From positions 118,111,649-118,156,751 of the forward strand of contig NC_068981.1 of NCBI RefSeq assembly GCF_001194135.2: a stretch of DNA of 45,103 bases, in the 5' to 3' direction. The notes beneath the pieces are model-generated. The model was not told the DNA's origin. It searched no databases and saw nothing but the letters and a program-made list of their open reading frames with translations. This document shows, piece by piece, positions 3,171 through 38,719 of this stretch. This DNA is from Octopus bimaculoides (Eukaryota). Position 1 is the first letter of the stretch; the number at the start of each line of letters is the position of its first letter. The position numbers were made by a program, and so were the translations under genes.

Positions 3171-3514
3171 NNNNNNNNNNNNNNNNNNNNNNNNNNNNNN
3201 NNNNNNNNNNNNNNNNNNNNNNNNNNNNNNNNNNNNNNNNNNNNNNNNNNNNNNNNNNNNNNNNNNNNNNNNNNNNNNNNNNNNNNNNNNNNNNNNNNNN
3301 NNNNNNNNNNNNNNNNNNNNNNNNNNNNNNNNNNNNNNNNNNNNNNNNNNNNNNNNNNNNNNNNNNNNNNNNNNNNNNNNNNNNNNNNNNNNNNNNNNNN
3401 NNNNNNNNNNNNNNNNNNNNNNNNNNNNNNNNNNNNNNNNNNNNNNNNNNNNNNNNNNNNNNNNNNNNNNNNNNNNNNNNNNNNNNNNNNNNNNNNNNNN
3501 NNNNNNNNNNNNNN

Positions 3515-7831: not shown

Positions 7832-8821
7832 NNNNNNNNNNNNNNNNNNNNNNNNNNNNNNNNNNNNNNNNNNNNNNNNNNNNNNNNNNNNNNNNNNNNN
7901 NNNNNNNNNNNNNNNNNNNNNNNNNNNNNNNNNNNNNNNNNNNNNNNNNNNNNNNNNNNNNNNNNNNNNNNNNNNNNNNNNNNNNNNNNNNNNNNNNNNN
8001 NNNNNNNNNNNNNNNNNNNNNNNNNNNNNNNNNNNNNNNNNNNNNNNNNNNNNNNNNNNNNNNNNNNNNNNNNNNNNNNNNNNNNNNNNNNNNNNNNNNN
8101 NNNNNNNNNNNNNNNNNNNNNNNNNNNNNNNNNNNNNNNNNNNNNNNNNNNNNNNNNNNNNNNNNNNNNNNNNNNNNNNNNNNNNNNNNNNNNNNNNNNN
8201 NNNNNNNNNNNNNNNNNNNNNNNNNNNNNNNNNNNNNNNNNNNNNNNNNNNNNNNNNNNNNNNNNNNNNNNNNNNNNNNNNNNNNNNNNNNNNNNNNNNN
8301 NNNNNNNNNNNNNNNNNNNNNNNNNNNNNNNNNNNNNNNNNNNNNNNNNNNNNNNNNNNNNNNNNNNNNNNNNNNNNNNNNNNNNNNNNNNNNNNNNNNN
8401 NNNNNNNNNNNNNNNNNNNNNNNNNNNNNNNNNNNNNNNNNNNNNNNNNNNNNNNNNNNNNNNNNNNNNNNNNNNNNNNNNNNNNNNNNNNNNNNNNNNN
8501 NNNNNNNNNNNNNNNNNNNNNNNNNNNNNNNNNNNNNNNNNNNNNNNNNNNNNNNNNNNNNNNNNNNNNNNNNNNNNNNNNNNNNNNNNNNNNNNNNNNN
8601 NNNNNNNNNNNNNNNNNNNNNNNNNNNNNNNNNNNNNNNNNNNNNNNNNNNNNNNNNNNNNNNNNNNNNNNNNNNNNNNNNNNNNNNNNNNNNNNNNNNN
8701 NNNNNNNNNNNNNNNNNNNNNNNNNNNNNNNNNNNNNNNNNNNNNNNNNNNNNNNNNNNNNNNNNNNNNNNNNNNNNNNNNNNNNNNNNNNNNNNNNNNN
8801 NNNNNNNNNNNNNNNNNNNNN

Positions 8822-8860
<39 letters not shown>

Positions 8861-9231
8861 GTATGTATATTCTGTCGTACACTGAATGTCCAGCTTACTT
8901 CTTTGCTAGTATCATTTTTTATCATTACTTAAAAAAAGATATATATATATATGATATAAAAGAACAAGTTTATATCTATTATTGCCTTACACCTTTTTCG
9001 GTGTATGGTGTCTGGTAGAGTGGCGCATATGCTTAGGTGAAATCAAATCCATGCGATGTCGTTTACCTTGTTCATTGTGGTTTGATAAAGTAAGTACCAG
9101 TTATGTATTTTGCTTCATTCAAAGGATTATACTCCACCCCTCCACACAAAAAATAGACATTCGTCGTCTTGTGTATGTTAGACATTATTAGTGTTAATAC
9201 ATTGTGTTGTGATCTTATTATAATGAATGCT

Positions 9232-9299
9232 TTTATTCGTATTTAGTTTATACTTTCCGTTATTGTTACATTTTATATTTCTACCGATTTTATTTTATT
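9232..9299 (-). promoter_or_regulatory. Candidate AATAAA polyadenylation signals in the 3' UTR
   Basis: TTTATT on the plus strand at 9232, 9289 and 9294, about 220-290 nt after the stop codon. The context is AT-rich, so chance matches are likely. Confidence 0.25.
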
Positions 9300-9515
9300 T
9301 TTTCTATTTTTAAAAATGTTTCATTTTTGTCGTGCTCCTTATCAACATCGTCATCGTCATCATCAATGTAGTCGTCGCCGTCGTTATCTTCATCATCGTC
9401 ATCACCATATTTTATATTATCCATATTCATGTCACTCATTACGAATGTGCATTTGAGCTATTTGTTTTGTTTTGTTTTGTCTCGTTTTTTTTTCTCATCT
9501 GTGTTTCTGTCTGTT

Positions 9516-10052
9516 TTATAAATGGTAAGCGACTTTAGGAAATATAACCATGATAGATGCGACGATGCAAGAGAGATACATAAAAAAGAATATACGATCC
9601 AGAACTAAGGCCACGTGCTTCCATTCTCGGGCTATTATTTCGCCCGCTTCTTTTTCACTGACTTTGTCTGTCATTTCTTGCAGGTGTCTTCTAATTTCTT
9701 TAACATCACCTTCCAATGTATTAATTGCCTGCCAAGGGCCTTGATTTCCGTCATTACACTGTTGTTCAATATCAGAGGCCGGTGTTATAGCTGTTGCACC
9801 AGCAAGACTAGTTGTACCATTGACAATTGGCGCTAAAGCAGATGCTAAAATTGGGTTTCGGTTTCGAACCCAATTGTCTTCGGTTTGCATTTCGAAAGTT
9901 CCTACTTTGTCATATTTGATTTCTTGCATTTTTTTCCTATCTTTGCTTGATTTGCTATTTTTTCTTTTTCTACACCTCAGTGCCAGCAGCTCTTCTTTGG
10001 TGAGTAACTGTGTTTGCATGCAGAGCATTCGACCGAAAAAATCAACCATCAC
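9516..10052 (-). CDS. Terminal exon of the same subunit: M3-M4 intracellular loop, MA helix, M4, stop
   Basis: Acceptor ttttccag|GTG ATG, phase 0, 178 aa plus TAA. It contains MA-like LEGDVKEIRRHLQEMTDKVSEKEAGEII and the hallmark REWKHVALVLDRIFFF before hydrophobic M4 (MYLSCIVASIMVIF). The first 14 aa of the track ORF 9516-10094 are intron. Confidence 0.96.
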   Translation of the reverse strand: MMVDFFGRMLCMQTQLLTKEELLALRCRKRKNSKSSKDRKKMQEIKYDKVGTFEMQTEDNWVRNRNPILASALAPIVNGTTSLAGATAITPASDIEQQCNDGNQGPWQAINTLEGDVKEIRRHLQEMTDKVSEKEAGEIIAREWKHVALVLDRIFFFMYLSCIVASIMVIFPKVAYHL

Positions 10053-10221
10053 CTGGAAAAGAAAATATGGAAAGCTTAAATGCCATATATTCAATTATAT
10101 GACATATATCCAAACAGTAACGCACAAACGTGTATACATTGAACAAAAACAAAAACTTCACTGTCCAAGGTGTTATTCTCGAAAGTTGATTCTAATTTTC
10201 ACGTGTATCGTATACACATAA

Positions 10222-10437
10222 TGGTTTCAAATTTTGGCACAGGGCCAGCAATTTTGGGGAAGGGAATAAGTCGATTACATTGATCCCAGTGCTCAACTAA
10301 GTCTTATTTTATCGACTTCTAAGGGATGAAAGGTAAAATCAACTTCAGTAGAATTTGAACAGAGAACATAAAACCGGACAAAATGCCGCTTAGTATCTTG
10401 TTAGGCATGCCTACGATTCTGCCAGCGCACCACCTTA
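10222..10437 (-). mobile_element. SINE family A copy
   Basis: Reverse complement of the consensus seen at 38026-38260 (ggcgagctggcagaatcgttag...gagttcaaattccgccgagg...). Confidence 0.8.
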
Positions 10438-10470
10438 TAAATACACACAATATTAAAGATTTCTGACATT

Positions 10471-10587
10471 AAGGCACGAGCTGGTAGAAGCGTTATCATG
10501 CTGTAGCTCGACGTTCTAACTCCGCCGATGTTAGCTTTAGATTTCATCCTTTAGGAGTCGATAAAATAAGTACCAGTTGATCACTGA
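10471..10587 (+). mobile_element. SINE family A, internally deleted copy
   Basis: aaggcacgagctggtagaagcgtta...tttcatcctttaggagtcgataaaataagtaccagttg. Confidence 0.75.
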
Positions 10588-10689
10588 TAGTTAAGTAACA
10601 GTTTGTAACGAAAGCTTTGTAAGCTTTGTAAGTAAATTTCTAGTTAGATGTAACGGTATTTAACTTCCCAATTCTATTTGAAATACGTC

Positions 10690-11700
10690 AAAATCAGATA
10701 TATATATATCATTTCCTTTGAGATGTTGTAAATTTTATCATAACGGCATTTGTTGTATTGGCCCCATGTTCACTCCAAGCAAACAACCCATTCGTCTTGT
10801 TATTATTTATGAATTTCTAAAGGGAAATAGTGCAGGTGTAGCAGGAAAATCACTCCATAGCAGTTATGGTGATGGAGTAGTAACTGCAAGAACATGCAGT
10901 AGATTGCTTTTACGATTCAAAAACGAGGACTACGGGTTGTTAGATGAATTAACAGAGGGGCGCCCAAGTGGGTTGGATCTTGATATACTGGAAGCCACTG
11001 TTGACACAAACCTGGCTGCTACAGTTCCGAAACTAAGCACCGTTCATCATGAATCGGAAAGGCTTGGTAAAGTGTCGAAGGTTGGAAAATGGATCACGCA
11101 GACAATCGCAAACAAAGTGTTGACTGCTATGCATCATTGCTATCTCGTAAGCTGTAAATACCTCTTTTGGATAGAGTCATTACTGGAGGTGAATAATTGA
11201 CACGTTATCATAATGGTAAGAAAAAAACATCTGCGTCTCATTCGTGGGGAAAAACCAAGTAAATTCTTCTAAGTGCATGGTTGGTTATGCGTGGAATAAT
11301 TCATCTTGAGCTGCTAGACGATAACCAAGCAATAGCAGCTGATGTACAATGCCAACAGCTAACACATTTGAAAGTAGCTTTGCTGCAAAAACGTCCATCA
11401 TTAACAAACATAACAGGAGCCATCGTGTGTCAAAGGTCTAAAAAATATGCCGGGAAAATTATGCATCACCCACCATATTCTAGAGATCTGCAAATTACCA
11501 TGGTTTTGAAGTTTACAAAATCATTTAAATGGATTTAGACCTACTTGAAGAGCAGAAGTTGAAAATGAGTTACTTTCCTTTTTCACTTCTAAACCTAAAG
11601 AATTTATGAATGTGACATTAAAAAGCCGATTAACAGATGGAAAGATGTCATGGAGAAGAACGGTGATTATATAAATCAGATATTATTTTTAATTGTTTGC
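10690..11700 (+). mobile_element. Degenerate mariner (Tc1/mariner) transposase remnant in the last intron, antisense to the gene
   Basis: Frameshifted fragments IRLVIIYEFLKGNSA...GRPSGLDLDIL...KVSKVGKW; RGIIHLELLDDNQAI.ADVQCQQL; HHPPYSRDL (mariner HPPYSPDL motif); RWKDVMEKNGDYI. TIRs were not resolved. Confidence 0.88.
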
Positions 11701-12265
11701 TAAAACTAAAGAGATATACTCTTTACTGTATAATTTAAAATATACTGTAAATAACAGATTTCTAACATTCACATACAGAGATGTAAATTTTTATTGGGGA
11801 GTATCATGTATCAAATTGACGCCAGAATGTGGCTAGAATATTAATGTATTTATAAAATATGATTCTAATTACATGTATCATGTACATATAAATAATAAAC
11901 ACTATTAAGCGCGAGGTAGATATATGTTATGAAGCTTACAAATTATCCATAAATTACCAGAGTTTAAACATTGACAGATAGTCATGACTATATTTGTCTT
12001 GTATGTTATTTAAACCGGAAAGTTGAAATATAAGATTAATGCCAGACGAAAACATTTACAAGAAAAGATCACTAGACAGTTCGTCTGTCATTCTAAATAT
12101 CAGCTAATCCACACTGATTGTAATAAAATAGATATTGCATAATTAAACTTACGCATGTGCATAAAGTATATGTAAACACATGTATACTACATAACAGAGT
12201 TATACCTTTACAAACACCGATGATTGAAAGTACACGTACATAAAGATAGAAATAAACAGACAAAC

Positions 12266-12381
12266 CTTTTTCACGATAGGTGGCACTCGAGATCGTGATC
12301 CGTGGAAATATAGATTGACCACAATGACGGACAAGAATGTGGACAGAGTGATAAGTATCATGTTTAGACAGTAGTAGGCTC
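12266..12381 (-). CDS. Internal exon of the same subunit: M3 helix and MX
   Basis: Minus strand reads ttctattttcag|GA GCC TAC TAC TGT...GTG AAA AAG|gtttgt. The exon is 116 nt, phase 1 to phase 0, and translates (G)AYYCLNMILITLSTFLSVIVVNLYFHGSRSRVPPIVKK, a typical nAChR M3 followed by the VP..VK motif. The ORF track misses it (different frame). Confidence 0.95.
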
Positions 12382-13276
12382 CTGAAAATAGAATAAAACA
12401 AAGTCAAATCATATATACACAGGCATATATACATATATATATATATATANNNNNNNNNNNNNNNNNNNNNNNNNNNNNNNNNNNNNNNNNNNNNNNNNNN
12501 NNNNNNNNNNNNNNNNNNNNNNNNNNNNNNNNNNNNNNNNNNNNNNNNNNNNNNNNNNNNNNNNNNNNNNNNNNNNNNNNNNNNNNNNNNNNNNNNNNNN
12601 NNNNNNNNNNNNNNNNNNNNNNNNNNNNNNNNNNNNNNNNNNNNNNNNNNNNNNNNNNNNNNNNNNNNNNNNNNNNNNNNNNNNNNNNNNNNNNNNNNNN
12701 NNNNNNNNNNNNNNNNNNNNNNNNNNNNNNNNNNNNNNNNNNNNNNNNNNNNNNNNNNNNNNNNNNNNNNNNNNNNNNNNNNNNNNNNNNNNNNNNNNNN
12801 NNNNNNNNNNNNNNNNNNNNNNNNNNNNNNNNNNNNNNNNNNNNNNNNNNNNNNNNNNNNNNNNNNNNNNNNNNNNNNNNNNNNNNNNNNNNNNNNNNNN
12901 NNNNNNNNNNNNNNNTATATATATATATATATATATATATCTGGAGGCCTTCTCAATTTCCAAAACTGAAATGTTTAGTCGGTGACCTCACGTGAGAAAA
13001 CATGTTGGAGCCATAACCTTCTTCGCTTGCTGATTAGTGAACGTAAATCGTACATAAACTGACCGTTTTCGGACACAATCAGAACATATCTCCATCTCGC
13101 CCAGAAGGTATTTTAGCTTCGAAGAATTTCGTTTCACGAATTACTTTTCTGAATCTTGCTGACGAAATCTGTGTTCTTACCACCATTAGTAAAAAGGTTA
13201 GCTACCATGTGTGATGTGTTGCTTCCAAAACTGCCGGCCTTGTGCCATAATTTGAAATCAATATTACTCGTCTAGA

Positions 13277-13685
13277 AGGTATTGAGCTGGCAGCATCGTT
13301 AGCACACGGGACAAATATTTGGTCGCATTTAGTTTGTCTTGATGCTCTGAGTTCAAATGCCACCGGGGTCGACTTCATGTTTCATCCTTACAGGATCGTG
13401 AGCATCGTGGTCGACGTAATCTACTTATCCCTAAATTCCTCCTGGGTGGGTGGACTGTACCTTTCATCCTTGCGGCGTCGATAAAATAAGTCTCAGTCGA
13501 GCACTCTGGACATAATGCTTGGCGACATTTCGTCTGTCTGTATGTTTTGAGTCCTCCAAGGCCAACATTGCTTTTCATCCTTTTGGTGTGGAGAATATGT
13601 GTACCAGTTGAGCACCCGGGTCGATGTAATCGACTTACCCCTTCCCCCCTAAAATTGCTGGCTTTGTGCCAAGCTAGGAAAATAC
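13277..13685 (+). mobile_element. Nested or tandem SINE family A fragments
   Basis: gagctggcagcatcgttagcac...ctgagttcaaatgccaccggggtcgac and a later gtaccagttgagcaccggggtcgatgtaatcgac...gctttgtgcc tail. Confidence 0.7.
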
Positions 13686-13779
13686 TATTACTCCCCTTAA
13701 TTTTAAGTTAGAATCGGAAATGAAGCAGAAGCTCGAATCCAATTGGCAGAATTTCTCTGTTCAGATTTTCTCTCCAGTA

Positions 13780-14070
13780 AATTCATGTCCCGTCATTTCT
13801 GCTAATTCCCACTTCTCGACAGAGCGTAGCTCTGAGATTAGTGTCTCTTCCCAGGTCGAGTCACTCCCTATTGAAAGGTCACAGTACCGGTACTACAAAC
13901 ATATGATTAGAATGTGATAAGAACGATTCTCAAATATATTCTTGAAACCTAGGAGACCTAAGGGTAGAGCAAGATAAGATAATTGGGAATCCAGTCGTAT
14001 TCTAATGACGGTTTCTTGTGAAACCTCAGGACTCTTTTCATACGACCCAGCCTGGAATAGTACGCGGAGA
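13780..14070 (+). mobile_element. 5'-truncated RTE-clade LINE 3' end
   Basis: Translates SSEISVSSQVESLPIERSQYRYYKHMIRM...RRPKGRAR, like the RTE ORF2 C-terminus. Its 3' UTR (cctcaggactct...ctggaatagtacgcggaga) matches the copy at about 38740-38800 on the minus strand. Confidence 0.75.
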
Positions 14071-14190
14071 TTGATTGATTGATTGATAGATAGATGGATG
14101 GATGGATGGATGGATGGATGGAAGGAAGGAAGGAGGGAAGGAAAGAAGGAAGGAAGGAAGGAAGGAAGGAAGGAAGGACGGGTGGATGGA
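14070..14190. repeat. Graded tetranucleotide array GATT>GATA>GATG>GGAA
   Basis: Directly visible, immediately 3' of the RTE fragment. Confidence 0.95.
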
Positions 14191-14269
14191 ATACTACAAT
14201 AATTTTTCACGAATTTTACTATATGTAAAAACGTAATAATGATATATAGGCGGAAGCACGGGTCATGGG

Positions 14270-14612
14270 TACAGACATAGGTGCAGTGCTACGACGCTCG
14301 CTTTGCAACGGCGTGGCTTTGGGTCCAATCCCACGCACCTCCTTTGCCAAGTGTTTTCACTATAGCTCCAGAATTACCAACAATGCCTTCTGAGTGGATT
14401 AATTGATAGAGTCTGTGTGGAAGCCCATCATGTATGCATGTGTGACTTAGTGATCGTCCCCCACCACCGCTACATAATCTGTTTTGGCTGTTTACGTTCC
14501 CGTAACTTAGAGGTTCTCCAAAAACAAATGCTGGAGTCGATTTGCTCGGCTGAATTCTTCAAGTTGGTACCCCAGTATGGCCAGAGTCCAATGACTAAAA
14601 CACATAAAAAGT
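14270..14612 (+). mobile_element. SINE family B, degenerate copy
   Basis: ctttgccaagtgttttcactatagctc...gtcgatttgctcggct...ccagtatggccagagtccaatgactaaaac matches 24900-25390. Confidence 0.7.
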
Positions 14613-15166
14613 AAAAGATAGCAGATTTATTTTACAATGGTTGCGTTTATTACATTAGCCAGCTTTTGAAATAATTTCTGCTTTGTATATACACTACATA
14701 CATTTGAAGAGTTATTTATCATTTCCGAGAGACCAATATTTTTTTTATTTCAGAGTTTAGATTATTTCATATCTAAATATCCATAATTTTTTTGGCGCCA
14801 ATTTCTTGCCGGTAAAATAAATGTTCAATTTAGACAGTTTTGTCATTAATCCACGTACTGTTCTTTTAGACTTACTAGAAGGAAAGAAAAGTCTTTTTCA
14901 GTCTTGAATAGTCGCTAATATAATGCATTGCATTCCCCAGATATTAAGTTTTTTAATAGTCATAATAACGTTGAACATAACTGTGCTGGGGGGGCGGTGC
15001 TCGACGAATTATAGACAGAAGGAAAATAAAAGCAAAAGCTGGTGATATTAGGATTTTCAAGATAAGCTTATTAAGAGGTTCTCATATAGTCCTAGCTATT
15101 AATGATAAATCGAATAATATATACAAATACATACATAGATACATTCATATATACACATACACACAC

Positions 15167-15198
<32 letters not shown>

Positions 15199-15829
15199 TT
15201 AAGTCAGCAAATATACATGTATACANNNNNNNNNNNNNNNNNNNNNNNNNNNNNNNNNNNNNNNNNNNNNNNNNNNNNNNNNNNNNNNNNNNNNNNNNNN
15301 NNNNNNNNNNNNNNNNNNNNNNNNNNNNNNNNNNNNNNNNNNNNNNNTATATATTTGTGTTTCCATGTATGTGTGTGCGTGCGCGTGCACGTGTGTGTGT
15401 GTATGTATGTATGTATATATGTATGTATGTATGTATGTATGTAAATATAGATACGTATAACTATATTCAGATTCATAAACCCAATATCGCATACGATTAA
15501 CATGAAATTCTCGATAATATATAGAATTAGTGTCAATTTTATCTCTGGTTGATGGTATTCAAGATATAGATATTAAATATATGTTTGCAAATAGATCTTC
15601 AGTCTACATATATCACAGCCTGAGTATATATAACCTTAGTGCAACCTCGCCATAACCCCTTTGTGTTTTGATGTATCTCAGCAGACATATCGTGCAATTA
15701 TAATTGGTCTCTGTCTACTTGATTGCCGTTAATCTCTGTAAAATTATTAATACCAGTTCGTATATTTTACTAACTCGACACATGGAAGATACTGATCCGG
15801 ATGAATATTTGTTTCAAATTTTTTAACAC

Positions 15830-18055
15830 ATGCCCAGCAATTTTAGTGAGTGACAGTTAGATGATAACATCGACCCTAGTACCCTACTGCTACTTATTTT
15901 ATCAACTTCGAAAAGAGAAATGGCATATCGATCTCGTTGGAATTTGAACTCAAAAGGTAATAACTTGGAAGAAATACTCCTTAGCATTTTGTCCGATGCG
16001 CTAACGATTGTGTCAGATAGCCTTAGTAATCATATATTTTTTTGTTTCTACTACAGACACAAGGCCTAAATTTTGTGGGTGATGAGGATCGATTATATGA
16101 GATCCTCTGTGCAAATGGTACTTAATATATTGAGCCCCACGAAATTATAAATGCAAATTCGGCTTCAGCGGAATTTGAAAACAGAACGAAATGCGTCAGA
16201 AGAAATGCTGCTAAATATCTTGTGTGAAGTGCTAACAGTTCTGTTAGCCTTTATTGCTTCAAATTTTCGTAGAAATTCAGCAGTTTTGGGGAAGTGGGTA
16301 TGTCTTTACCATCCACCCCTCGGATATCAACTAGTACTTTATTTTATCGATACCGGGAGGATGAAAGGAAAAACCAACCTCTAAGTTATGCGAACGCGGA
16401 AAGTGAAAAGCTGGAAGGAATTCCGCTAAGCATTTGGTTCGACGAATTAAAGTTCTGCGAACTGCCTGCCTTTATCCGGATGCATGTTATGATGAATACA
16501 GTAATGAAGAATGTGATAACAGCATAAATAGCTTCTTTTTTTTTTCATTTTTGCACATGCCCAGATATTTGAAGGGAATGGTTAGTCAATTAATTCAGTG
16601 CCCAGTATTTGACTAACACATTTTTGACTAAAATAGTAACAGTGTTTAACTAAAACCTCAGAGTAATATTGATTTCAAATTTTGACACAAGGCCAGCAAT
16701 TTCGGGGAAGAGGGTAAGTTGGTTATTTCGGCCCTAGTGCTCAAATGGAATATATTTTATCAACTTTTAAAGGATGAAAAGTAAAGTTGACCTCGGCAGT
16801 ATTTGAACTCAACGTAAAGATGGACGAAATGTCGCTAAGAATTTTGCCAGGCCTGCTAACGACTCTAAACATTTAGGGGAATGGCAAGTCGACACTAATA
16901 TGCCATTGGTACCTATATCGACCGAGAAAAGGTGAAAGGCTAAATCAGCCTTGTCTGCATTTCAACTCAGAAATGAAATGCTAAGCACTTTGTGAGGCAT
17001 GCCAACGATTCTGTCAGTTTACCGCCTTCCTTAAGACAGTAATAATAAGAATGATTTCAAAATTTAGCAGCAGACCACACTCTGAGGGGAGAGGAGCTAT
17101 CGATAACATTGACTCGAATTAACGCAGTAGTACTTTCTTGAATTGAACCCGTAGAGCGAGAGGGAAAAATCAAAAGTCGGAAAACAATTCGGTATAGCTA
17201 AATAATCCAAAGAATTAAAATGCAAGAATACAAATACAGCTCATTTACCATTCTGATAGGTTCCCTCTTTTGTTTCGCCCATCCCGGCTAACTGTGACAA
17301 ATCCTTCAGTGTAATCATCATACTGTTTCAAATTTTGTGACATGACAGAACGATTTAAAGAGAGGGGTTAGTCGATTGCATCAACCACAGTTCTTGACTT
17401 ATACTTATTTTATCGATGCTGAAAGGATAAATAGCAAAGTTGACCTCGATGGTATTTCAACTAAGAATTTAAACTACCGAAAAGATTGCTGCCGTAAAAC
17501 ATTTTGTCCAATGCTCTAATTCTTCTATCAGTTAGCCTCTTTTGTAATTATAATCTTGTCTACGCTAGGCGCAAAGCCCGAAATTTTGGGGAAGGGGGCC
17601 AGTCAATTAGGTCGACCTCAGTACGCAACAGATACTTAATTTTTTGACCCCGAAAGGATGAAAGGCAAAGTCGATCACGGCGGAATTTGAACTCAGAACG
17701 TAAAGACAAACATTTCGACCGGCCTGTAAGGATGAAAAACAAAGTCAACCTCGACTGAACTTGAATTTAGAATGTAAAAACGTATGAAATTCTACTAAGC
17801 ATTAGTTCCGGTGTGCTAATGATTCTGCCAGCTCACCAATAATGATAATGATGATTTTCAATTTTGGCATGAGACCAACAATTTCTGGAGAGGGGTAAGA
17901 CGATTACAGCCACCCCAGTGTTTAACTGTTGCTTAATTTATCGAGCCCGAAAAGATAAAACGGAAAGTCGACTTCGCCGGAATTTGAACTCAGAAAGTAG
18001 CGACGGGCGAAATATCGCTAGGCATTCCGTCCAGCGCGCTAACGATTCTGCAACA
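15830..18055 (-). mobile_element. Cluster of about 8-10 co-oriented SINE family A copies
   Basis: Repeated ggaatttgaactcag...gaaat...ctaagca...ctaacgattctgccag motifs near 15950, 16170, 16400, 16800, 16970, 17460, 17690, 17760 and 17980, all in the same orientation. Confidence 0.85.
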
Positions 18056-18794
18056 AGAAGAAGAAGAAGAAGAAGAAGAATTTCTTAATTAGTAGACTGG
18101 ATTTACCTATTGAGTGGTTGAGAGGTTTTTTTTTTTTTTAAACAGTAACTAAGTTTCTCATGACTATATCATGTGCAATTCTATGTTAGCTCGTACATGA
18201 TTTTATATGCACATTTTTACGAGTGTGACCGTGCATGAACAAAGAATATTTCTAAGTTAATTCATATACTTTATACTATGTGACAATATTTATGCAACTC
18301 AATAAAAATTATCTGAAGAAAGAAATAATTAGGTGCCCACGTGATAAATCGTATATAATCCATGATTCAGATTTTGTACAGCGGACTGGAATAACAAGTA
18401 ATATCTATTTATTATCAAAATGGAAGTGCTAGTCTGTATTATTTATAAGACAGAGAAAAACATGAACACCATAATTAAATTTCATCTCGTTTCATCTTTG
18501 TGCCGAGTTTAGAAAATATATGGTGTTTGTTTTAATTTAGGAAATTGTATTTAATATAATTGTCTCCTCTTGGTAGTGACAACAAAGACCTAATCCTAGG
18601 CAAGTACCATATAGTAAGATTTAGTTTTGAAATTGAAACCATGACGTTAAGATAGAAATAGAGTTATTGGTAGATAGATACATCATTTTGTAATTTATAC
18701 AAAAAGTATTACGAGTTTAAAAATTAGAACGAAATATAAATGAGAAAAAGAAAGGAAAAATAATGAATGAATTAGGGATCAAAAGGGTAACATA

Positions 18795-18816
18795 CGTACA
18801 TACAGATAGACAGACT

Positions 18817-18862
<46 letters not shown>

Positions 18863-18945
18863 AACATCCATACATACATGCATACATACATACATGCATG
18901 CATACATACATACATGCATACATACATACATACATACACACACAT
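18795..18945. repeat. (GATA)n/(CATA/CATG)n microsatellite
   Basis: Directly visible. Confidence 0.95.
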
Positions 18946-19027
18946 TCAGACTAACGCACCACAATCATACCCATATATTTATGATGTATGAATTCCTACA
19001 TATATAACAGTGCGTAGGTTTGAATTG

Positions 19028-19066
<39 letters not shown>

Positions 19067-19070
<4 letters not shown>

Positions 19071-19428
19071 CATGGAAAAATGCGATCATGAAAAGTAGTA
19101 TTCTTAAGATTATAAACCTAGAAAAGTACGGGACAAGTTATTACACCTGTAAAAGTATAGGACAAACTATTACTTCAAATAAAGTAAAGAATAAGAAAAT
19201 TTTACTTAAAATATTGCAGCAAAGAATGCTAGTTCTAATTTATCTCTCTTTACAGTTCTCATCTTTTAGATTTATTGTACAAAACTGTTCAGCTAATTTC
19301 TTATTCTTTACTTTACTTCAAGTAATAGTTTGTCCTATACTTTTACAGGTCCAATAACTTGTCCTCTACGTTTCCAGGTTTATAACCTTAAACATATTAC
19401 TTTTCATGCACGCATTTTTCCATATAAT
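19067..19428. repeat. Foldback / MITE-like long inverted repeat
   Basis: Arms 19067-19202 and about 19295-19428 are reverse complements, with about 85% identity by eye and a roughly 90-nt spacer. Confidence 0.9.
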
Positions 19429-19880
19429 CCATGATTTTTCCAGGCATTGTAGTTATAAGATAATTAATAATGTGTCAAGGATTCAGGATTTTACCTTATA
19501 AAATACTGCGTAGGTGGATACATTGGCTGCTATTTTTTAGCGTGTCGGGCAACCAAGTAAAGACGCTTTCATTGGTTTGATTGCGTGATGAAATTGTTTT
19601 ACACATATATGTATAACATGCATATATATATCATCCTCAGAAGTTAGAGATTAAGTCAAAAACTGAGTTTCGTGTATTGGCACACGAATGTGTCCATTGT
19701 TGCTCAGTAACTTGTGACAAATTAACTTATAAAATACAAAATCTTGTCAAAAAGGTTAAGAGTAAACCCTGTCGTATGTCACACATTGTACCAGTATCGG
19801 AAGTTTCAAAGTGTTTAGTTAAACAAAATTAAAAAATAATCTGTACGCCAAATTGAATCGATTCGAAATGGATAAAATGC

Positions 19881-19978
19881 AAAGCCGACGTAATTTGAAC
19901 TCAGAACATAAACACAGGCGAAATACCGTGAAGCACTTCGCCAGGCGCGACAACGTTACTGCCAGCACGCCGTCTTAG
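19881..19978 (-). mobile_element. SINE family A head fragment
   Basis: taatttgaactcagaac...gaaataccgtgaagcacttcgccaggcgcg...tgccagcacgccgtctta. Confidence 0.7.
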
Positions 19979-20479
19979 TTCGTCAGAATTCATTTTAGCA
20001 ATATATTCTTTAATATTCTTATTGATAAGCATACTCCTTCACTCTCTTACACGAAATTTCGTGGTATTTACCCCCATAACTTTTCTTCCACTAAATTTTG
20101 TTCAATGCGACTAACGACTCTCAATTCCTCATACATTTTTCTATCATTTAAGCCTAAGAAAAGTATACTTTTATTTTAAAATGAAAGAGTTTATGTTAAT
20201 TGAAGGTGAATAGGTGCCTTGCTTCCCCCCTTTTTACTATTGAATCAAATCCCAAACTATTTATGCCAAACTGTAGCTGAGGATGTGTCCTCTTTCAGAC
20301 TGTTAACAGTTTGCAATTTATTTGAGAACTGAATTAGCGGTGAAGCTTGGAAGCTGCTGCGATTGACGAAATGGTGGACTTAAGAATAAATTCAGCCACT
20401 ATCGTGGTTGAATGATATATNNNNNNNNNNNATATATATATATATATATACTGGAGGCACACCTTTTTTCCTGTTTCTG

Positions 20480-20665
20480 TTTTATCTGTATTTCAAAGGG
20501 CCAGCTTTGTCACATTCTGTGTCACGCTGAATCTCCCCGAGGTCTACGTTAAGGGTACACATATCTGGGGAGTACTCAGCCACTTGCATGTTACTTTCAC
20601 GAGCAGGCTGTTCCATTGATCGGATCAACTTGAACCCCCATTGTCGTAACCGACGGAGTGGCACA
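20480..20665 (+). mobile_element. SINE family D, headless fragment
   Basis: Reverse complement of 4460-4640 (gagcaggctgttccattgatcggatcaac...). Confidence 0.8.
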
Positions 20666-22487
20666 ATATATATATATATACACACACAGCGACAGACAGA
20701 TAGAGAAACAGTTGAAAGAACGGTAATGGTGAGGATGTACATTAAATATGGATCACTAGCTAGCTGTCAAGTTACATTTTAAAACTTTGCAAGCTATAGA
20801 CACAGTTAACTTGATCAAAGCTTTCTTGCATATCGTATGACATTTACAACTTTCAATGCCTGTCTTCTTATGTTTGTCGCTTTGTGTTGTATGTGTCAAT
20901 AATAATCGCCAGACATCATAAGATTAATCTATGTAGAAGAGTTGACAGTTGACCCATGAATCTGCATAGGTTAATGAATGCAACTGATATATAGGCGACT
21001 TTACAAACACCGTTAAATATGATTTATGTTGCTATGTTAGCGAGTCTGCGAGATGATTTCGATTTTCATTTAAACCTCCTTTCCAGCCTGCTACCATGTT
21101 ATATGCATGAAGACCACGATTTAAAACTTAAACATGGGACTACAAATATTTTGATTAGCACACACTTGAATCTACTTGCAAATAAATACTGATTCCTTGA
21201 AAAGAAAATTGGCATTTATGAAGGTGGATACAGACCAATTAAATTTGAGACAGTTTTAATTACTGTTAATCTTTTTAGGGAAGAGATAGACAAAATAACA
21301 TATTCTTAAGTAAGTCTTAAAGACTAGGTGTCTACAAGGAAAATGCGGATTATAGACTTCATGTTAAAACTATTATCAAATGTCAGCTTTTTACACTCAA
21401 AAAATAAAGTTGATAGCAAATACACACTTGGGACTCGGCTAATATATGTGCCCCAATGACAGATGCAGGAGTCTTGATACCTAAATGCAATTGGCATATT
21501 CTTCAGATTTAAAGAAATGTAAGAATAAATTCAAACTCAATAAAATACGAGAAGAAGGAAAGAGAAGTTTGGATTAGATCATCTAAGTAGCATCGATTAA
21601 GTTTAAATGGAGACGATTTCTGACATATTTCAGCGGTGTAAAATAGGGGAAAGGGCATTAATCTGAAGCCAAGTAAAATTTCCGATCATGATTTGCTATA
21701 TTTCAAAACTTTAGGGTTCACAAGCACTAAATACTTCTTGCTGAACTTTCAGGAATTTTATTTCCGCAGTTTTGTTCTTAATATTCATTACGTTCCTGTC
21801 GGTGCATTGGTTTCGATGGCTCGTTCAATTTGTTGACGTTTCGCGTCAAGGAGTGATTCGTTGCATTGTATTTTAACTGAAACGGAATCAAATTTTCATG
21901 TGGTCATATGCAAAGAGCAATTCAAGTGTTCAAATATACAGGAAACCAAGAAAGCATTCGGTAATCTTCCAGAAACTTAGCTCCTTTTTAAAACTTATTT
22001 ATAATGCAAGAAAATTTTGTGATTTGAGATTTAAATCGAATCGTTGAGACGTGTAAAGAATATAAACTGCCGGTATCACGAAAGACAACGTGAAACAATT
22101 TCAATAATTTAGCGAAATTTGTTCTGTTTCTCGAAATTTATGTAATTAAAGAATTAATCATGAACATCCAAGAACTACGAATAAAAAGATTAACATTATG
22201 GAATATCAGCGTTGTGCAACTGAAACTTTTAACATTATGCAATTATATGTTTTACTTGAGACACAAATATGGCAGGATCCTGAAGAACTCATTTATGTAC
22301 TTCGAGCGAACCTTGTCTGTGACACAGTTGCGGCTGCTGTTCGAGCTTAAATCATTCCGCGGATGACATGCTGGAAGCATGAGGGTTACAGCTTGTCTTT
22401 TACCACTTTTGAAATAAATGGCTGTGCTCTCACTTTGATTAAGAATCGATAAGTAAATAATTCGAAAAAGGAAAAAAGTAGACTCAC

Positions 22488-22574
22488 CAATTAGTGGAAT
22501 TGCTGAGGCTGCAGGTGGTGTTGACTCTGCTAATAGTAATAGCAATACGAAGAAGGCAACAAATATATTCATCC
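22488..22574 (-). CDS. Internal exon of a nicotinic acetylcholine receptor-like (Cys-loop) subunit: M2 pore helix and M2-M3 loop
   Basis: Minus strand reads gttttttttctcaaag|GG ATG AAT ATA TTT...CCA CTA ATT G|gtgagt. The exon is 87 nt, phase 1 at both ends, and translates (G)MNIFVAFFVLLLLLAESTPPAASAIPLI(G). This aligns with the nAChR M2/M2-M3 pattern G..V/L.LLLxAExxP...PLIG and splices in frame to the next exon. Confidence 0.92.
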
Positions 22575-24847: not shown

Positions 24848-25395
24848 ATAGCTGTGTGGTAAGTAGCTTGCTTACGAACCACATGGTTTCGTGTTCAGTC
24901 TCACTGCGTGGCACCTTGGGCAAGTGTCTTCAACTATAGCCTCGGGCCAACCAAAGCCTTGTGAGTGGATTTGGTTGACGGAAACTGAAAGAAGCCCGTC
25001 GAGTATATGTATATATGTATATATACATACATATATATATATANNNNNNNNNNNNNNNNNNNNNNNNNNNNNNNNNNNNNNNNNNNNNNNNNNNNNNNNN
25101 NNNNNNNNNNNNNNNNNNNNNNNNNNNNNNNNNNNNNNNNNNNNNNNNNNNNNNNNNNNNNNNNNNNNNNNNNNNNNNNNNNNNNNNTGTGTGTGTGTGT
25201 GTGTGTGTTTGTTCCCCACCATCGCTTGACAACCGATGCTGGTGTGTTTACGTCCCCGTAACCTAGCGGTTCGGCAAAAAAGAGACCGATAGAATAAGTA
25301 CTAGGCTTACAAAAAATAAGTCCTGGGGTCGATTTGCTCGACTAAAGGTGGTGCTCCAGCATGGCCACAGTCAAATGACTGAAACAAGTAAATGA
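24848..25395 (+). mobile_element. SINE family B with internal (TA/TG)n microsatellite
   Basis: Head agctgtgtggtaagtagcttgc..., body ggcaccttgggcaagtgtcttcaactatagcc..., an internal microsatellite with an N gap, and tail ...gtgctccagcatggccacagtcaaatgactgaaacaagtaaa. Confidence 0.85.
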
Positions 25396-26888
25396 GTAAA
25401 AGAGATAAATAAGCTTTTAACTAAAGTCAATCAAGTAAATGTAGATTTTTTGTGAAAATTGTCTTGTGGGCTATTTTTGGTTGGGAAATTCGGTAGTTTA
25501 TATCGGAAAAGTTGAAGCCAAAAGCAGCCATGAAGGAAAAAAATATACTACTGAAAATACTAAGTTGATAATTAGAAATTGATACCATAATTATAAATAT
25601 TTATTTGACAGTCTTTATAAAGAGCTATGATGTCAAAATTATCCTTGTTCTTAATGGGACATCTCCATCGAAATTCAAAATTACTTGTTAGGTTTGGCAT
25701 AAAGCAGAAGCCCACAGCAATGTTAAACTCTGATCCAAATTAGAGCGTGATGTTGTTTGAGCGAGAAAATAAGGATTCCATTCCAAAATAGAAATCGATT
25801 GGATGAGATAATAGAATTGTGAGCAGCCTTTACACAGAAAGCTAAGAGTCATTCGTGTAATCAGTAACCTAATTGACTTTCGGAGTGTTCCAGCGGAATT
25901 AAGAATAGTTTGAGAATAACATCCTTTTGATGTCATGCAATGATTTTGAAAGAACGAGGAAAGATTTATATAATCTCACTTTCTAGAAAGGCAAGAAATT
26001 AAAAACATGATTTCCAACAGCAGTTACTTTACAAATTAACGCATACTTAAATTTATTTATTAAAAAAACATTAATATGAACGTTTTTCCTGTATGATTTC
26101 GCATAATATTCGAAAGCATTTTCGAACATTCACCAGTATTAAAGCCTCAGCGAATCTCGCTGTAGTAGCCTTTTGAAACCATTGAGTTAATGTATGGTTC
26201 TGCGTGTGTGGGTGTGGGTGTCTGTACGAATGTATGCCTGCATGCTCCCATGTATATATGCGTATATATATACATATATATANNNNNNNNNNNNNNNNNN
26301 NNNNNNNNNNNNNNNNNNNNNNNNNNNNNNNNNNNNNNNNNNNNNNNNNNNNNNNNNNNNNNNNNNTATATATGAATCGTTTGTAGAAATACATGAATCC
26401 GGAGGAGAAGCACCCGCTAAGATGTAGAGCAGTTAATATTATAATGGGGTAGGCTGGTTTATGGGGTTACCCTGGGTTTCTTGCTCGTAAGGATTTTAGC
26501 CTTACGGCGTGTCTTCAGACCCAAAGCACTGCTGGCCCGATACCTCTGTGAAATATGGAGTGGCGAAAAGCCTCGTTTTTAAGGGTAAATAGCTAGGTGA
26601 TTATCTCATCGCGGTTCACCTATCGCGGACTCCTCAGGATATCGCGAGTTTCTGTGGCCAGTAAGTATTTGTATTTTTTAGATTTTAATTATTTCTGTGG
26701 TAAAATAAGTATTTTCATGGCTAAAAATTAATAAATTAATAAATAGAAATACAGCACTGCCCTGTATAACACATTAATTAAAATATATTAAAAGAAAATA
26801 CCTAGTGTATCGTGGAGAAGTAAACAAAGTATCGCATATACTGTATGGAAAACGAAACTCGGGAGGCGAGTGTGTGGTATTGTCTTGT

Positions 26889-30599: not shown

Positions 30600-31118
30600 A
30601 AAAACTGCAAAAATTGGTAGCCTTTACTACCTCAAAAGCATACTCTCCACTCCAATTATGAAGAAAAGAGAGGATGAAACCGATAAACAGTCTGTCTACC
30701 CTATGTGAAAGTCCTCTCCGAAAAGATGCAAAAGATATGCGGCCCATATGACATCAGGACAGTATTCAAGAGTAATACAACACTTCGCATGTACTCCATC
30801 CCATGCAGCTGTGATAGGTTATACAAAGGCGAAACATGTCGCCCTCTCAAAATAAGGGTAGAGGAACATCGCAAAGCTGTGAAACGGGGAGATATTGATA
30901 AATCGGGCATAGTTCATCTTGTATGGAAAAATGGAGACCACCTCCGCTTGTGGGATGAAGATAAAATAATAGACAGAGAACACCACTGGAAAATACGAAA
31001 ACTAAAAGAAGCAGCACATATACTAGGACACAACAACCTCCTAAGGAGACAGAGTGCAGATATGAACAGCATATGGGAACTGGTATTAAGGAAGGATAGG
31101 AGAATATTAGATTTATAA
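30600..31118 (+). mobile_element. Penelope-like element remnant: linker and GIY-YIG endonuclease
   Basis: CLPYVKVLSEKMQKICGPYDIRTVFKSNTTLR-MYSIPCSCDRLYKGETCRPLKIRVEEH...H...W...IIDRE..W..RK.KEAAHI matches the PLE linker and GIY-YIG pattern. Confidence 0.88.
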
Positions 31119-31293: not shown

Positions 31294-31509
31294 NNNNNNN
31301 NNNNNNNNNNNNNNNNNNNNNNNNNNNNNNNNNNNNNNNNNNNNNNNNNNNNNNNNNNNNNNNNNNNNNNNNNNNNNNNNNNNNNNNNNNNNNTTAATTA
31401 TATTTTAGTTAATTTCAATGGGGAAAATTGATTTGTAAAACGATTAAATCGTAAAACGAGTCATGGAACGAATTAAACTCGTACAGCGAGGTATCGTTGT
31501 TTGTTGTAG

Positions 31510-38423: not shown

Positions 38424-38719
38424 NNNNNNNNNNNNNNNNNNNNNNNNNNNNNNNNNNNNNNNNNNNNNNNNNNNNNNNNNNNNNNNNNNNNNNNNNNNNN
38501 NNNNNNNNNNNNNNNNNNNNNNNNNNNNNNNCCTAGAGTAGAAAAGATTAATTTGTTTTATTTGAGATAATTGGTCACTCTGTCCACTTCGCTGCTTTAG
38601 ATCGAACCCCCCCCCCGAATATCATGAAGCATCTCCCATATACAATACAGTGATATGAAAAGCTTCGATCAATAGAGATTTTCTGCGCAATTAGCAAATA
38701 AAGACTCCCTCTATAGCTA

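What the first reader, a model, noticed from the sequence alone, without database searches (positions are those of the whole stretch)
9516..22574. Three scattered exons assemble into a candidate chloride-selective (inhibitory) acetylcholine receptor subunit
Seen: the exons at 22488-22574, 12266-12381 and 9516-10052 have matching splice phases (1/1, 1/0, 0/stop) and join into M2-M3-loop-MA-M4 (246 aa). Knowledge: molluscs such as Lymnaea and Aplysia have nAChR-derived anion-selective subunits carrying a Pro-Ala motif in the M1-M2 linker. From memory their M2 reads ...PAKMxLGMNIFVAFF.LLLLLA, which is what this exon encodes. Inference: this is a cephalopod member of that clade, an ACh-gated Cl- channel evolved from a cation-channel scaffold. 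The decisive -2'/-1' residues lie in the upstream exon, which is not visible here.
Basis: partly seen in the sequence, partly recalled or inferred. Interest (0 to 1): 0.72.

Follow-up and report, generated by a model that had tools for sequence, protein, structure and literature searches.

The report
Octopus chloride-conducting acetylcholine receptor gene, 3′ end

Summary
Observation confirmed. On the minus strand, exons 22574..22488, 12381..12266 and 10052..9516 have AG/GT splice sites and phases 1/1, 1/0 and 0/stop. They join into 246 aa (M2 from 4′, M3, loop, MA, M4).

This peptide is 100% identical to residues 267-512 of XP_052825757.1, named "neuronal acetylcholine receptor subunit alpha-10 isoform X3" (Octopus bimaculoides).

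The three assembly gaps all lie in the 10.1-kb intron between the first two exons and interrupt no coding sequence.

The exon with the decisive linker is not in the window. In the full RefSeq protein it reads FWLPPESPAKMQL|GMNIF: Pro(-2′), Ala(-1′), Lys(0′), and no Glu.

The protein groups with Lymnaea LnAChR B (NJ bootstrap 100). Its pore region is 36/36 identical to LnAChR B.

Courtney et al. (bioRxiv 10.1101/2025.04.02.646353) expressed O. bimaculoides AChRB1 (LOC106879694) in oocytes. They report a reversal-potential shift in low chloride and none in sodium-free solution. Their in-situ probes for the O. vulgaris ortholog map colinearly onto these exons and span both splice junctions without mismatch.

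Verdict: interpretation supported, already known, low residual interest. The misleading RefSeq "alpha-10" name is worth noting.

The parts
22488..22574 (-). Coding exon A (87 nt, phase 1 in / phase 1 out). Encodes M2 from Gly4′ to Glu20′ plus the start of the M2-M3 loop: (G)MNIFVAFFVLLLLLAESTPPAASAIPLI(G).
   Evidence: AG acceptor with a poly-T tract, GTGAGT donor; identical to XP_052825757.1 residues 267-295. AChRB1 probe 33 maps to 22493-22517 with 0 mismatches.
12382..22487 (-). Intron between exons A and B. It is 10,106 nt as assembled and contains all three flagged assembly gaps (599 N in total). Its length is an estimate only.
   Evidence: The junction is validated by probe 34 (0 mismatches across A|B) and by colinear orthologues.
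12266..12381 (-). Coding exon B (116 nt, phase 1 in / phase 0 out). Encodes M3: (G)AYYCLNMILITLSTFLSVIVVNLYFHGSRSRVPPIVKK.
   Evidence: Probes 29, 31 and 32 map here with 0-1 mismatches. An orthologous exon, 97.5% identical, is present in a second, unidentified genome, locus L001 2046-2165.
10053..12265 (-). Intron between exons B and C (2,213 nt, no gap). It hosts a Mos1/mariner-type transposase HTH fragment on the + strand at 10718-11200.
   Evidence: Pfam HTH_48 E=8.6e-11. The junction is validated by probe 30 (0 mismatches across B|C).
9516..10052 (-). Last coding exon C (537 nt, phase 0, ends in TAA at 9518..9516). Encodes the large cytoplasmic loop, the MA helix (…EGDVKEIRRHLQEMTDKVSEKEAGEIIAREWKHVALVLDR) and M4 (IFFFMYLSCIVASIMVIF), then PKVAYHL*.
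   Evidence: Ten AChRB1 probes map to 9519-10010 with 0-3 mismatches.
8866..9515 (-). 3′ untranslated region, at least this far. It may run on into the assembly gap at 7832-8821. AATAAA motifs lie at 9299..9294 and 9237..9232.
   Evidence: AChRB1 probes 1-3 and 5-17, designed on the O. vulgaris mRNA, map colinearly to 8866-9515 with 0-5 mismatches. AATAAA positions.

Best explanation
The window holds the last three coding exons and the 3′UTR, on the minus strand, of the Octopus bimaculoides gene AChRB1 (LOC106879694). RefSeq lists six isoforms, X1-X6, auto-named variously 'alpha-10', 'alpha-9' or 'beta-like 2'.

The product is an α-type nicotinic-receptor-family subunit with a Cys-loop, a YxCC loop C and an intact aromatic ACh-binding box. 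Five copies assemble into a homomeric channel that ACh opens at micromolar concentration. The channel conducts anions (Cl−), so ACh inhibits the cell.

Mechanism, from established knowledge of the family. In cationic nAChRs a ring of Glu at −1′, at the cytoplasmic end of M2, selects cations. Here the aligned Gly-Glu-Lys is replaced without any gap by Pro-Ala-Lys. This removes the negative ring and reshapes the constriction, as in GlyR/GABA-A receptors and in engineered anionic α7 channels.

The window encodes the rest of the pore (4′ to 20′: G-M-N-I-F-V-A-F-F-V-L-L-L-L-L-A-E), M3, the cytoplasmic loop, the MA helix and M4.

Shown here: exon structure, identity with the RefSeq product, the PAK linker in that product, orthology to LnAChR B, and the mapping of the published AChRB1 probes.
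Taken from the literature: anion selectivity, EC50 and expression pattern.
Inferred: that LOC106879694 / XM_052969792.1 is this very gene.
For: - Exons and join.
- Pfam transmembrane domain on the joined peptide at E=7e-20. The full product has LBD (6e-67) plus TM (6e-34) domains.
- 100% identity to XP_052825757.1 residues 267-512. The residues just upstream read ...YYPCCSEPYPDLTFTLKIKRKVAFYNYILILPCVLLSSLTMVLFWLPPESPAKMQL.
- All six RefSeq isoforms share the three window exons.
- Ungapped alignment to human α4 puts PAK under GEK, and loops A, B, C and D keep their aromatic residues.
- NJ tree of 46 relatives: the window protein falls in a 13-taxon molluscan clade with Lymnaea LnAChR B (ABA60381.1), bootstrap 100/100.
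- The end of M1, M2 and the start of the M2-M3 loop are 36/36 identical to LnAChR B.
- Among proteins carrying this M2 motif, nearly all of those surveyed have S-P-A-K before it.
- Literature. LnAChR A and B are described as the cation- and anion-conducting Lymnaea subunits (PMC4193815). The Pro-Ala schistosome and Lymnaea subunits form one clade within the nAChRs (PMC4055736). Courtney et al. (bioRxiv 10.1101/2025.04.02.646353) report octopus AChRB1 with ACh EC50 1.9 µM. For the O. bimaculoides ortholog LOC106879694 / XM_052969792.1 they report that the reversal potential shifts in low Cl− and not in Na+-free solution.
- Of the 34 probe halves for O. vulgaris AChRB1 (LOC115214201) that fall in this part of the mRNA, 31 map colinearly on the window at 0-5 mismatches. 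Both junction-spanning probes match my join perfectly. Probe 36 encodes ESPAKMQL.
Against: - The selectivity-determining linker, M1 and the whole ligand-binding domain are not in the window. What the window itself shows is only the M2-to-M4 part.
- The identification with LOC106879694 is indirect. It rests on orthology to LOC115214201, on there being a single such gene in the 90% cluster, and on the constant XM/XP accession offset (XM_052969792 to XP_052825752). I could not fetch the mRNA record.
- The functional data come from a preprint and from oocytes. Native receptors could be heteromers with AChRB2 or AChRB3.
- The tree has no cationic outgroup, so it shows orthology groups and not the root.
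Confidence: 0.93

Rival explanations
1. It is an ordinary cation-selective neuronal nAChR α subunit, as the RefSeq product name 'alpha-10' and similar names suggest.
For: RefSeq names. The closest solved structures are cationic α4/α3/α7 receptors. The YxCC α signature is present.
Against: The product has Pro-Ala-Lys where cationic subunits have Gly-Glu-Lys. It is orthologous to the anion-conducting LnAChR B with bootstrap 100 and has an identical pore. The published ion-substitution data show chloride dependence. The RefSeq names are automatic best-hit labels; the six isoforms of this one gene carry three different subunit names.
Confidence: 0.02
2. It is one of the paralogous octopus PAK subunits (AChRB2 or AChRB3). 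These gave no current as homomers, so its function would be unknown or strictly heteromeric.
For: Octopus has at least three PAK-type genes (P0096, P0126 and P0124/P0231). The preprint reports three, AChRB1-3.
Against: The probe set listed for AChRB1 (LOC115214201) maps onto these exons and this 3′UTR at 0-5 mismatches. 3′UTR matches cannot come from a paralogue that is only about 50% identical in protein. The window protein is the LnAChR B orthologue, while the paralogues fall with LnAChR I and K.
Confidence: 0.03
3. It is a dead gene fragment: a 3′ remnant separated from its 5′ half, as the old annotation implied by calling a 245-aa protein here and a 295-aa protein elsewhere.
For: The old models XP_014784857.1 (245 aa, exactly these three exons) and XP_014781167.1 (295 aa, ending in read-through after ...PAKMQLG) are separate. 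The upstream exon is absent from 22.5 kb of upstream sequence.
Against: The newer chromosome-level annotation joins them into 512-523-aa products. The frame is open with canonical splice sites. Protein identity is 99.6% to O. sinensis and 96.5% to Argonauta. The ortholog's mRNA gives specific in-situ signal, and the cloned cDNA makes functional channels. Cephalopod introns of more than 20 kb are unremarkable (own knowledge).
Confidence: 0.01
4. It is a cephalopod chemotactile receptor (CR), an nAChR-derived contact chemosensor not gated by ACh.
For: CRs are nAChR-like and expanded in octopus (PMC13174522; PMC10338036).
Against: CRs are described as intronless and as lacking the canonical ACh-binding residues. 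This gene has large introns, keeps the aromatic box and YxCC, and has one-to-one orthologues across molluscs.
Confidence: 0.01

Closest known systems
Octopus AChRB1 (O. vulgaris/sinensis LOC115214201; O. bimaculoides LOC106879694 / XM_052969792.1), Courtney et al., bioRxiv 10.1101/2025.04.02.646353
   Same: Judged to be the same gene. The peptide is identical to the O. bimaculoides RefSeq product. The published probes for the O. vulgaris ortholog map colinearly on the exons and 3′UTR and cross both splice junctions.
   Different: Nothing known. The window holds only the 3′ part (residues 267-512 of isoform X3).
Lymnaea stagnalis LnAChR B (ABA60381.1 / Q2XWL1; van Nierop et al. 2005, J Neurosci 25:10617)
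   Same: Orthologue (bootstrap 100). α-type with YxCC and a PAK linker. The 36 residues from the end of M1 through M2 are identical. Described as the anion-conducting Lymnaea subunit (PMC4193815); that it does so as a homomer is my recollection of the 2005 paper, which I could not open.
   Different: 60.5% identity overall. The cytoplasmic M3-M4 loop is divergent and shorter in octopus.
Schistosoma mansoni SmACC-1/-2 and related flatworm subunits (MacDonald et al. 2014, PMC4055736)
   Same: Same Pro-Ala nAChR-derived clade. M2 is nearly identical: FWLPPESPAKMMLGMNIFVAFFVLLLLLAESTP.
   Different: Different phylum. The M2-M3 loop and the cytoplasmic loop diverge. These are more distant relatives, not orthologues of this gene.
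Vertebrate α7/α4 nAChRs and the engineered anionic α7 (Pro insertion, Glu−1′Ala, Val13′Thr; Galzi et al. 1992, from memory)
   Same: Same fold and family (E~1e-85). The same principle of charge-selectivity switch at −2′/−1′.
   Different: The natural octopus sequence has PAK in place of GEK with no length change in the alignment. It keeps Val at 13′ and has Val rather than Leu at 9′ (read).
C. elegans ACC acetylcholine-gated chloride channels
   Same: ACh-gated anion channels of the Cys-loop superfamily.
   Different: The ACCs group with GABA/Gly-type receptors (PMC4055736). The octopus protein's best structural relatives are nAChRs. This is a convergent function on a different branch.

Membership tests
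Cys-loop pentameric ligand-gated ion channels (nAChR branch) | Four-helix transmembrane domain (M1-M4, Pfam PF02932) | tested here: met
   Window peptive-level test on the joined peptide: E=7e-20, profile positions 31-233 of 233, i.e. M2-M4. Full product: E=5.9e-34 over positions 1-233.
Cys-loop pentameric ligand-gated ion channels (nAChR branch) | Extracellular ligand-binding domain with the 13-residue Cys-loop | tested here: met
   In the full RefSeq product only, not in the window. PF02931 E=6.3e-67. The Cys-loop reads CSIDITYFPFDAQTC.
Cys-loop pentameric ligand-gated ion channels (nAChR branch) | Closer to nAChRs than to GABA/Gly/GluCl receptors | tested here: met
   The top 60 PDB matches are all acetylcholine-receptor chains (α4, α3, α7, α6, α9, α2, β and muscle subunits, plus one entry labelled only 'Acetylcholine receptor'). 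The best is E=5e-88.
α-type nAChR subunit | Vicinal cysteines in loop C (YxCC) and the aromatic box (loop A Tyr, loop B Trp, loop C Tyr×2, loop D Trp) | tested here: met
   KYYPCCSEPYPD, LYNYAD, GSWTYDG and NVWITYQW align to the human α4 equivalents. These lie outside the window.
AChRB family (lophotrochozoan nAChR-derived anion channels: LnAChR B/I/K, SmACCs, octopus AChRB1-3) | Pro-Ala-Lys at −2′/−1′/0′ of the M1-M2 linker in place of Gly-Glu-Lys | tested here: met
   FWLPPESPAKMQL in XP_052825757.1, immediately before the window-encoded GMNIF. Probe 36 of the O. vulgaris mRNA encodes ESPAKMQL. The exon itself is not in the window.
AChRB family (lophotrochozoan nAChR-derived anion channels: LnAChR B/I/K, SmACCs, octopus AChRB1-3) | Family-specific M2 sequence LGMNIFVAFFVLLLLLAESTPPAAS | tested here: met
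   Encoded by window exon A. Identical in LnAChR B, Aplysia, Pecten and other octopods.
AChRB family (lophotrochozoan nAChR-derived anion channels: LnAChR B/I/K, SmACCs, octopus AChRB1-3) | Phylogenetic placement with LnAChR B | tested here: met
   NJ tree on 471 alignment columns with 100 bootstraps. The 13-taxon clade containing LnAChR B has support 100. No cationic outgroup was included.
AChRB family (lophotrochozoan nAChR-derived anion channels: LnAChR B/I/K, SmACCs, octopus AChRB1-3) | ACh-gated current whose reversal potential follows Cl− | not testable with these tools
   Reported for O. bimaculoides AChRB1 in Xenopus oocytes by Courtney et al.. Not reproduced here.
Cephalopod chemotactile receptors (CRs) | Intronless gene and loss of canonical ACh-binding residues | tested here: not met
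   The gene has introns of 2.2 and 10.1 kb within the window alone. The binding residues are retained. CR features as described in PMC13174522.

The most novel reading that the evidence does not exclude
Automatic naming labels this anion-channel clade as 'alpha-10(-like)', 'alpha-9', 'beta-3' and so on, and with such names goes the GO term for cation-selective activity. Cephalopod and other mollusc transcriptome studies that report 'chrna10' may therefore be reading out inhibitory AChRB channels. One example is the chrna10 hub gene correlated with CO2 treatment and behaviour in pygmy squid (PMC11202396). If that transcript is an AChRB orthologue, a chloride-conducting cholinergic receptor would be tied directly to the altered-Cl−-gradient hypothesis of ocean-acidification behaviour. 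Nothing in the window itself is new.
Probability: 0.25. Interest if true: 0.4.

Novelty: already known. Interest (0 to 1): 0.15.

Why it matters
Nicotinic-type receptors that conduct chloride make acetylcholine a fast inhibitory transmitter. In octopus this channel is reported in photoreceptors and dopaminergic optic-lobe neurons and is proposed to carry feedback inhibition in vision.

For the scan, the case shows that a reader working from raw sequence recognised an anion-selective nAChR from M2 alone and named the correct decisive test.

For databases, it shows that the RefSeq product names are functionally misleading. One gene carries 'alpha-10', 'alpha-9' and 'beta-like 2' across its isoforms, and the older annotation called it 'unc-29-like' and 'alpha-L1-like'. 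These names could propagate a 'cation channel' annotation into expression studies.

The biological finding itself is already in the literature, so little discovery value remains.

Tried and rejected
- Upstream exon in the window. tblastn of seven full-length relatives and an exact 6-mer scan with nine octopus isoforms or models found nothing between 22575 and 45103. The scan included the read-through intron tail of the old 5′ model. Single isolated 6-mer hits were treated as chance. The exon is outside the window or hidden deep in one of eight gaps.
- The look-up of encoding contigs for XP_052825757.1: not on record. I could therefore not fetch the upstream exon's DNA or measure the intron.
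- van Nierop et al. 2005 (PMC6725845): not held. LnAChR B's anion selectivity is cited second-hand from PMC4193815 and PMC4055736 and from memory.
- First tree attempt with Biopython distance routines timed out. It was redone with numpy distances.
- The first homology search, with the 246-aa peptide, missed the octopus RefSeq protein. A second search with a relative's ECD-M3 region found it.
- 'Inhibitory-CL clade' of the MolluscaGenes preprint: rejected as the home of this gene. That clade lacks YxCC and has PAR-type motifs, whereas this protein has YYPCC and PAK.
- Chemotactile receptor, GABA/Gly-like ACC, pseudogene and cationic α subunit readings: rejected (see rival explanations).
- Literature searches for cephalopod anionic nAChRs found nothing relevant before one search turned up the Courtney et al. 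preprint.


Full report
**1. The observation**

- Exon A, 22574..22488, is 87 nt. Its acceptor is ...ttttttttctcaaag|GG and its donor is ATTG|gtgagt.
- Exon B, 12381..12266, is 116 nt. Its acceptor is ...ttctattttcag|GA and its donor is AAAAAG|gtttgt.
- Exon C, 10052..9516, is 537 nt. Its acceptor is ...ttttcttttccag|GT and it ends in TAA.

The phases are 1/1, 1/0 and 0/stop. The join reads (G)MNIFVAFFVLLLLLAESTPPAASAIPLI-G-AYYCLNMILITLSTFLSVIVVNLYFHGSRSRVPPIVKK-VMVDFFGRM...IFPKVAYHL*, 246 aa in all. Pfam's transmembrane model for neurotransmitter-gated channels matches it at E=7e-20 over profile positions 31-233, which cover M2 to M4. This is not a chance assembly.

**2. The assembly gaps**

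The window has 14 runs of N, 6,033 bases or 13% of its length. The three gaps flagged in the finding all lie within the intron between exons A and B. That intron spans 12382..22487, is 10,106 nt as assembled and contains 599 N.

No gap touches coding sequence. The closest gap ends 68 nt upstream of exon B's acceptor, which is intact. The B-C intron (2,213 nt) has no gap.

The frame continues correctly across the gapped intron:
- The RefSeq protein and all orthologues are colinear at ...IPLIG|AYYCLNM....
- Published mRNA-derived probes cross the A|B and B|C junctions with zero mismatches to my join.

Only the intron's length is uncertain.

**3. Whose gene it is**

A first homology search with the 246-aa peptide returned mollusc, annelid and flatworm proteins. 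Every one that extended upstream read FWLPPESPAKM[QM]LGMNIFVAFFVLLLLLAESTPP.

A second search, with a relative's extracellular-to-M3 region, returned named proteins. One of them was XP_052825757.1, 'neuronal acetylcholine receptor subunit alpha-10 isoform X3 [Octopus bimaculoides]' (512 aa). Its residues 267-512 are 100% identical to the window's peptide.

The cluster listing shows six isoforms of this gene, which carry three different automatic names. It also shows orthologues in O. sinensis, O. vulgaris and Argonauta hians. For the O. sinensis and Argonauta proteins I compared, full-length identity is 99.6% and 96.5%.

The same listing holds two older, split models:
- XP_014784857.1, 'unc-29-like', 245 aa, is exactly the window's three exons starting at Met.
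- XP_014781167.1, 'alpha-L1-like', 295 aa, ends ...FWLPPESPAKMQLG and then reads through into an intron.

All isoforms share the three window exons. Nothing of residues 1-266 is in the window, and neither is the read-through tail. It lies beyond 45103 or deep in a gap.

**4. The decisive residues**

In the full product the sequence preceding the window-encoded Gly4′ is ...VAFYNYILILPCVLLSSLTMVLFWLPPES-P-A-K-M-Q-L.

The ungapped HMMER alignment to human α4 places LPPESPAKMQLGMNIFVAFFVLLLLLAE under [28 protein letters not shown]. This gives Pro at −2′, Ala at −1′ and Lys at 0′, with no Glu.

The product also has these features:
- the Cys-loop, CSIDITYFPFDAQTC;
- the α signature YYPCC;
- the loop A, B and D aromatic residues;
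- both Pfam domains.

The closest solved structures are cationic nAChRs (α4 at 5e-88, α7 at about 1e-84) and not GlyR, GABA-A or GluCl. It is unlike the C. elegans ACCs, which group with the GABA/Gly receptors (PMC4055736).

Reading the pore directly: 6′ is Asn, 9′ is Val rather than the usual Leu, 13′ is Val and 20′ is Glu. These residues are shared across the family.

**5. Orthology**

I built a neighbour-joining tree of 46 full-length relatives, using 471 alignment columns, Kimura distances and 100 bootstraps.

The octopod proteins fall in a 13-taxon clade with gastropod and bivalve proteins that includes Lymnaea LnAChR B (ABA60381.1). Support is 100, and the topology follows the species tree.

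Two other octopus PAK genes fall with LnAChR I and LnAChR K respectively.

From the end of M1 through M2 into the M2-M3 loop, octopus and LnAChR B are 36/36 identical. The tree has no cationic outgroup, so it establishes orthology groups but not the root.

**6. What is already known**

- PMC4055736 describes the Pro-Ala motif as the hallmark of the Lymnaea and schistosome nAChR-derived chloride channels. It places them as one clade inside the nAChRs.
- PMC4193815 describes LnAChR A and LnAChR B as the cation- and anion-conducting Lymnaea subunits.
[quoted passage not shown] - EC50 is 1.9 µM for ACh and 98 µM for choline.
- It is expressed in photoreceptors and in dopaminergic outer-granular-layer neurons.
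- Its reversal potential shifted strongly in low-chloride solution and not in sodium-free solution.
- They note the PAK motif and the relationship to Lymnaea AChRB and the Schistosoma channels.
- Two paralogues, AChRB2 and AChRB3, gave no homomeric current.

**7. Linking the preprint's gene to this window**

The preprint's Supplemental file 5 (held here as supplement 3) lists the in-situ (HCR) probe pairs for LOC115214201. I stripped the initiator arms and mapped the first 40 of the 25-nt target arms to the window.

- Arms 1-34 map, in order, to the + strand, meaning they are antisense to a minus-strand mRNA.
- Arms 1-3 and 5-17 map to 8866-9515, the 3′UTR, with 0-5 mismatches.
- Arms 19-28 map to exon C, arms 29, 31 and 32 to exon B, and arm 33 to exon A.
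- Three arms do not fit the genomic window at 5 or fewer mismatches. Arm 4 maps in order at 8939-8963 with 6 mismatches. Arm 18 finds no match (best is 8 mismatches, elsewhere). Arm 30 crosses the B|C junction.
- Against my spliced join, arm 34 crosses A|B and arm 30 crosses B|C with 0 mismatches each.
- Arms 35-40 do not match the window. They encode TMVLFWLP, ESPAKMQL, VAFYNYI, LPCVLLS, PCCSEPYP and LTFTLKIK, which belong to the missing upstream exons.

Matches in the 3′UTR exclude a paralogue. The window's gene is therefore the O. bimaculoides orthologue of AChRB1.

That it is LOC106879694 itself is an inference. It follows from there being one such gene, and it is consistent with the accession offset: XM_052969792 pairs with XP_052825752, isoform X1 of this cluster.

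**8. Mechanism**

Shown here:
- the gene structure;
- the identity with the RefSeq product;
- the PAK linker in that product;
- the retained ACh-binding residues;
- orthology to LnAChR B and an identical pore.

From the literature: the homomeric ACh-gated anion current.

From established knowledge of Cys-loop receptors: the −1′ Glu ring selects cations. Replacing it with Ala next to a Pro removes the negative ring and narrows or reshapes the constriction, so that anions pass. With a typical neuronal chloride gradient, opening the channel hyperpolarises or shunts the cell.

The window contributes the upper two-thirds of M2, M3, the cytoplasmic loop, the MA helix and M4.

**9. Verdict**

The thing itself is already known: it is annotated in RefSeq, cloned, and functionally characterised in a preprint.

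Interest is low. One practical residue remains, which is that automatic names for this clade are misleading. In one search many orthologues are called 'alpha-10-like', and this may mislabel inhibitory receptors as cation channels in expression studies.

**10. Other things seen**

- A Mos1-type transposase HTH fragment lies in the B-C intron.
- The tandem-repeat scan and the ORF translations show microsatellite runs next to most of the assembly gaps.
- A contig from an unidentified genome, presumably another cephalopod (ENA ERZ21867824, L001), carries the orthologous last two exons. They are 97.5% and 72% identical to the window's, and its intron is 7.9 kb rather than 2.2 kb.

Noticed in passing
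window 10718-11200 (+), inside the intron between exons B and C: A 160-aa ORF with a Mos1/mariner transposase HTH domain (Pfam HTH_48, E=8.6e-11). It is probably a decayed mariner-type transposon fragment sitting in the intron, on the strand opposite to the gene.
   Followed up: partly
window 30705-31118 (+): A 137-aa ORF (…CSCDRLYKGETCRPLKIRVEEHRKAVKRGD…) with no Pfam match at E≤0.01. From memory it resembles the endonuclease part of a retroelement. It lies in the intron upstream of exon A.
   Followed up: partly
window gaps at 1520-2435, 3171-3514, 7832-8821, 12450-12915, 15226-15347, 20421-20431, 25044-25187, 26283-26366, 31294-31393, 32969-33452, 36793-37546, 38424-38531, 40181-40824, 41676-42541: There are 14 assembly gaps, 6,033 N or 13% of the window. 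Where the ORF translations and the tandem-repeat scan show the flanks, most gaps abut simple repeats (TA, CA/TG, CTT or A runs), so the gaps look like unresolved microsatellites. Non-N G+C content is 37%.
   Followed up: partly
RefSeq and older models of this gene (proteins P0096, P0204-P0208, P0211, P0213): The six isoforms of this one gene are auto-named 'alpha-10', 'alpha-9' or 'beta-like 2'. The older annotation split the gene into an 'unc-29-like' protein (245 aa, exactly this window's exons) and an 'alpha-L1-like' protein (295 aa). Across molluscs the AChRB clade is mostly labelled 'alpha-10-like', although it carries the anion-type PAK linker.
   Followed up: partly
window 22488-22574 (exon A), M2 positions 6′, 9′ and 13′: The pore has Asn at 6′. 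It has Val at 9′, where Cys-loop receptors almost always have the gate Leu. It keeps Val at 13′, the position changed to Thr in engineered anionic α7. These residues are identical in LnAChR B, Aplysia, Pecten and schistosome relatives.
   Followed up: no
L001 2046-2165 and 10031-10582 (ENA ERZ21867824, contig ctg121501l, 318 kb): A second, unidentified genome, presumably another cephalopod, carries the orthologous M3 exon (97.5% identical) and last exon (72% identical). Its intron is about 7.9 kb, against 2.2 kb in the window. Short Logan contigs L002-L004 carry a third version of the last exon (74% identical).
   Followed up: partly
PMC11202396 (pygmy squid transcriptomics), not in the window: [quoted passage not shown] Given how this clade is auto-named, it might be an AChRB-type anion channel.
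   Followed up: no
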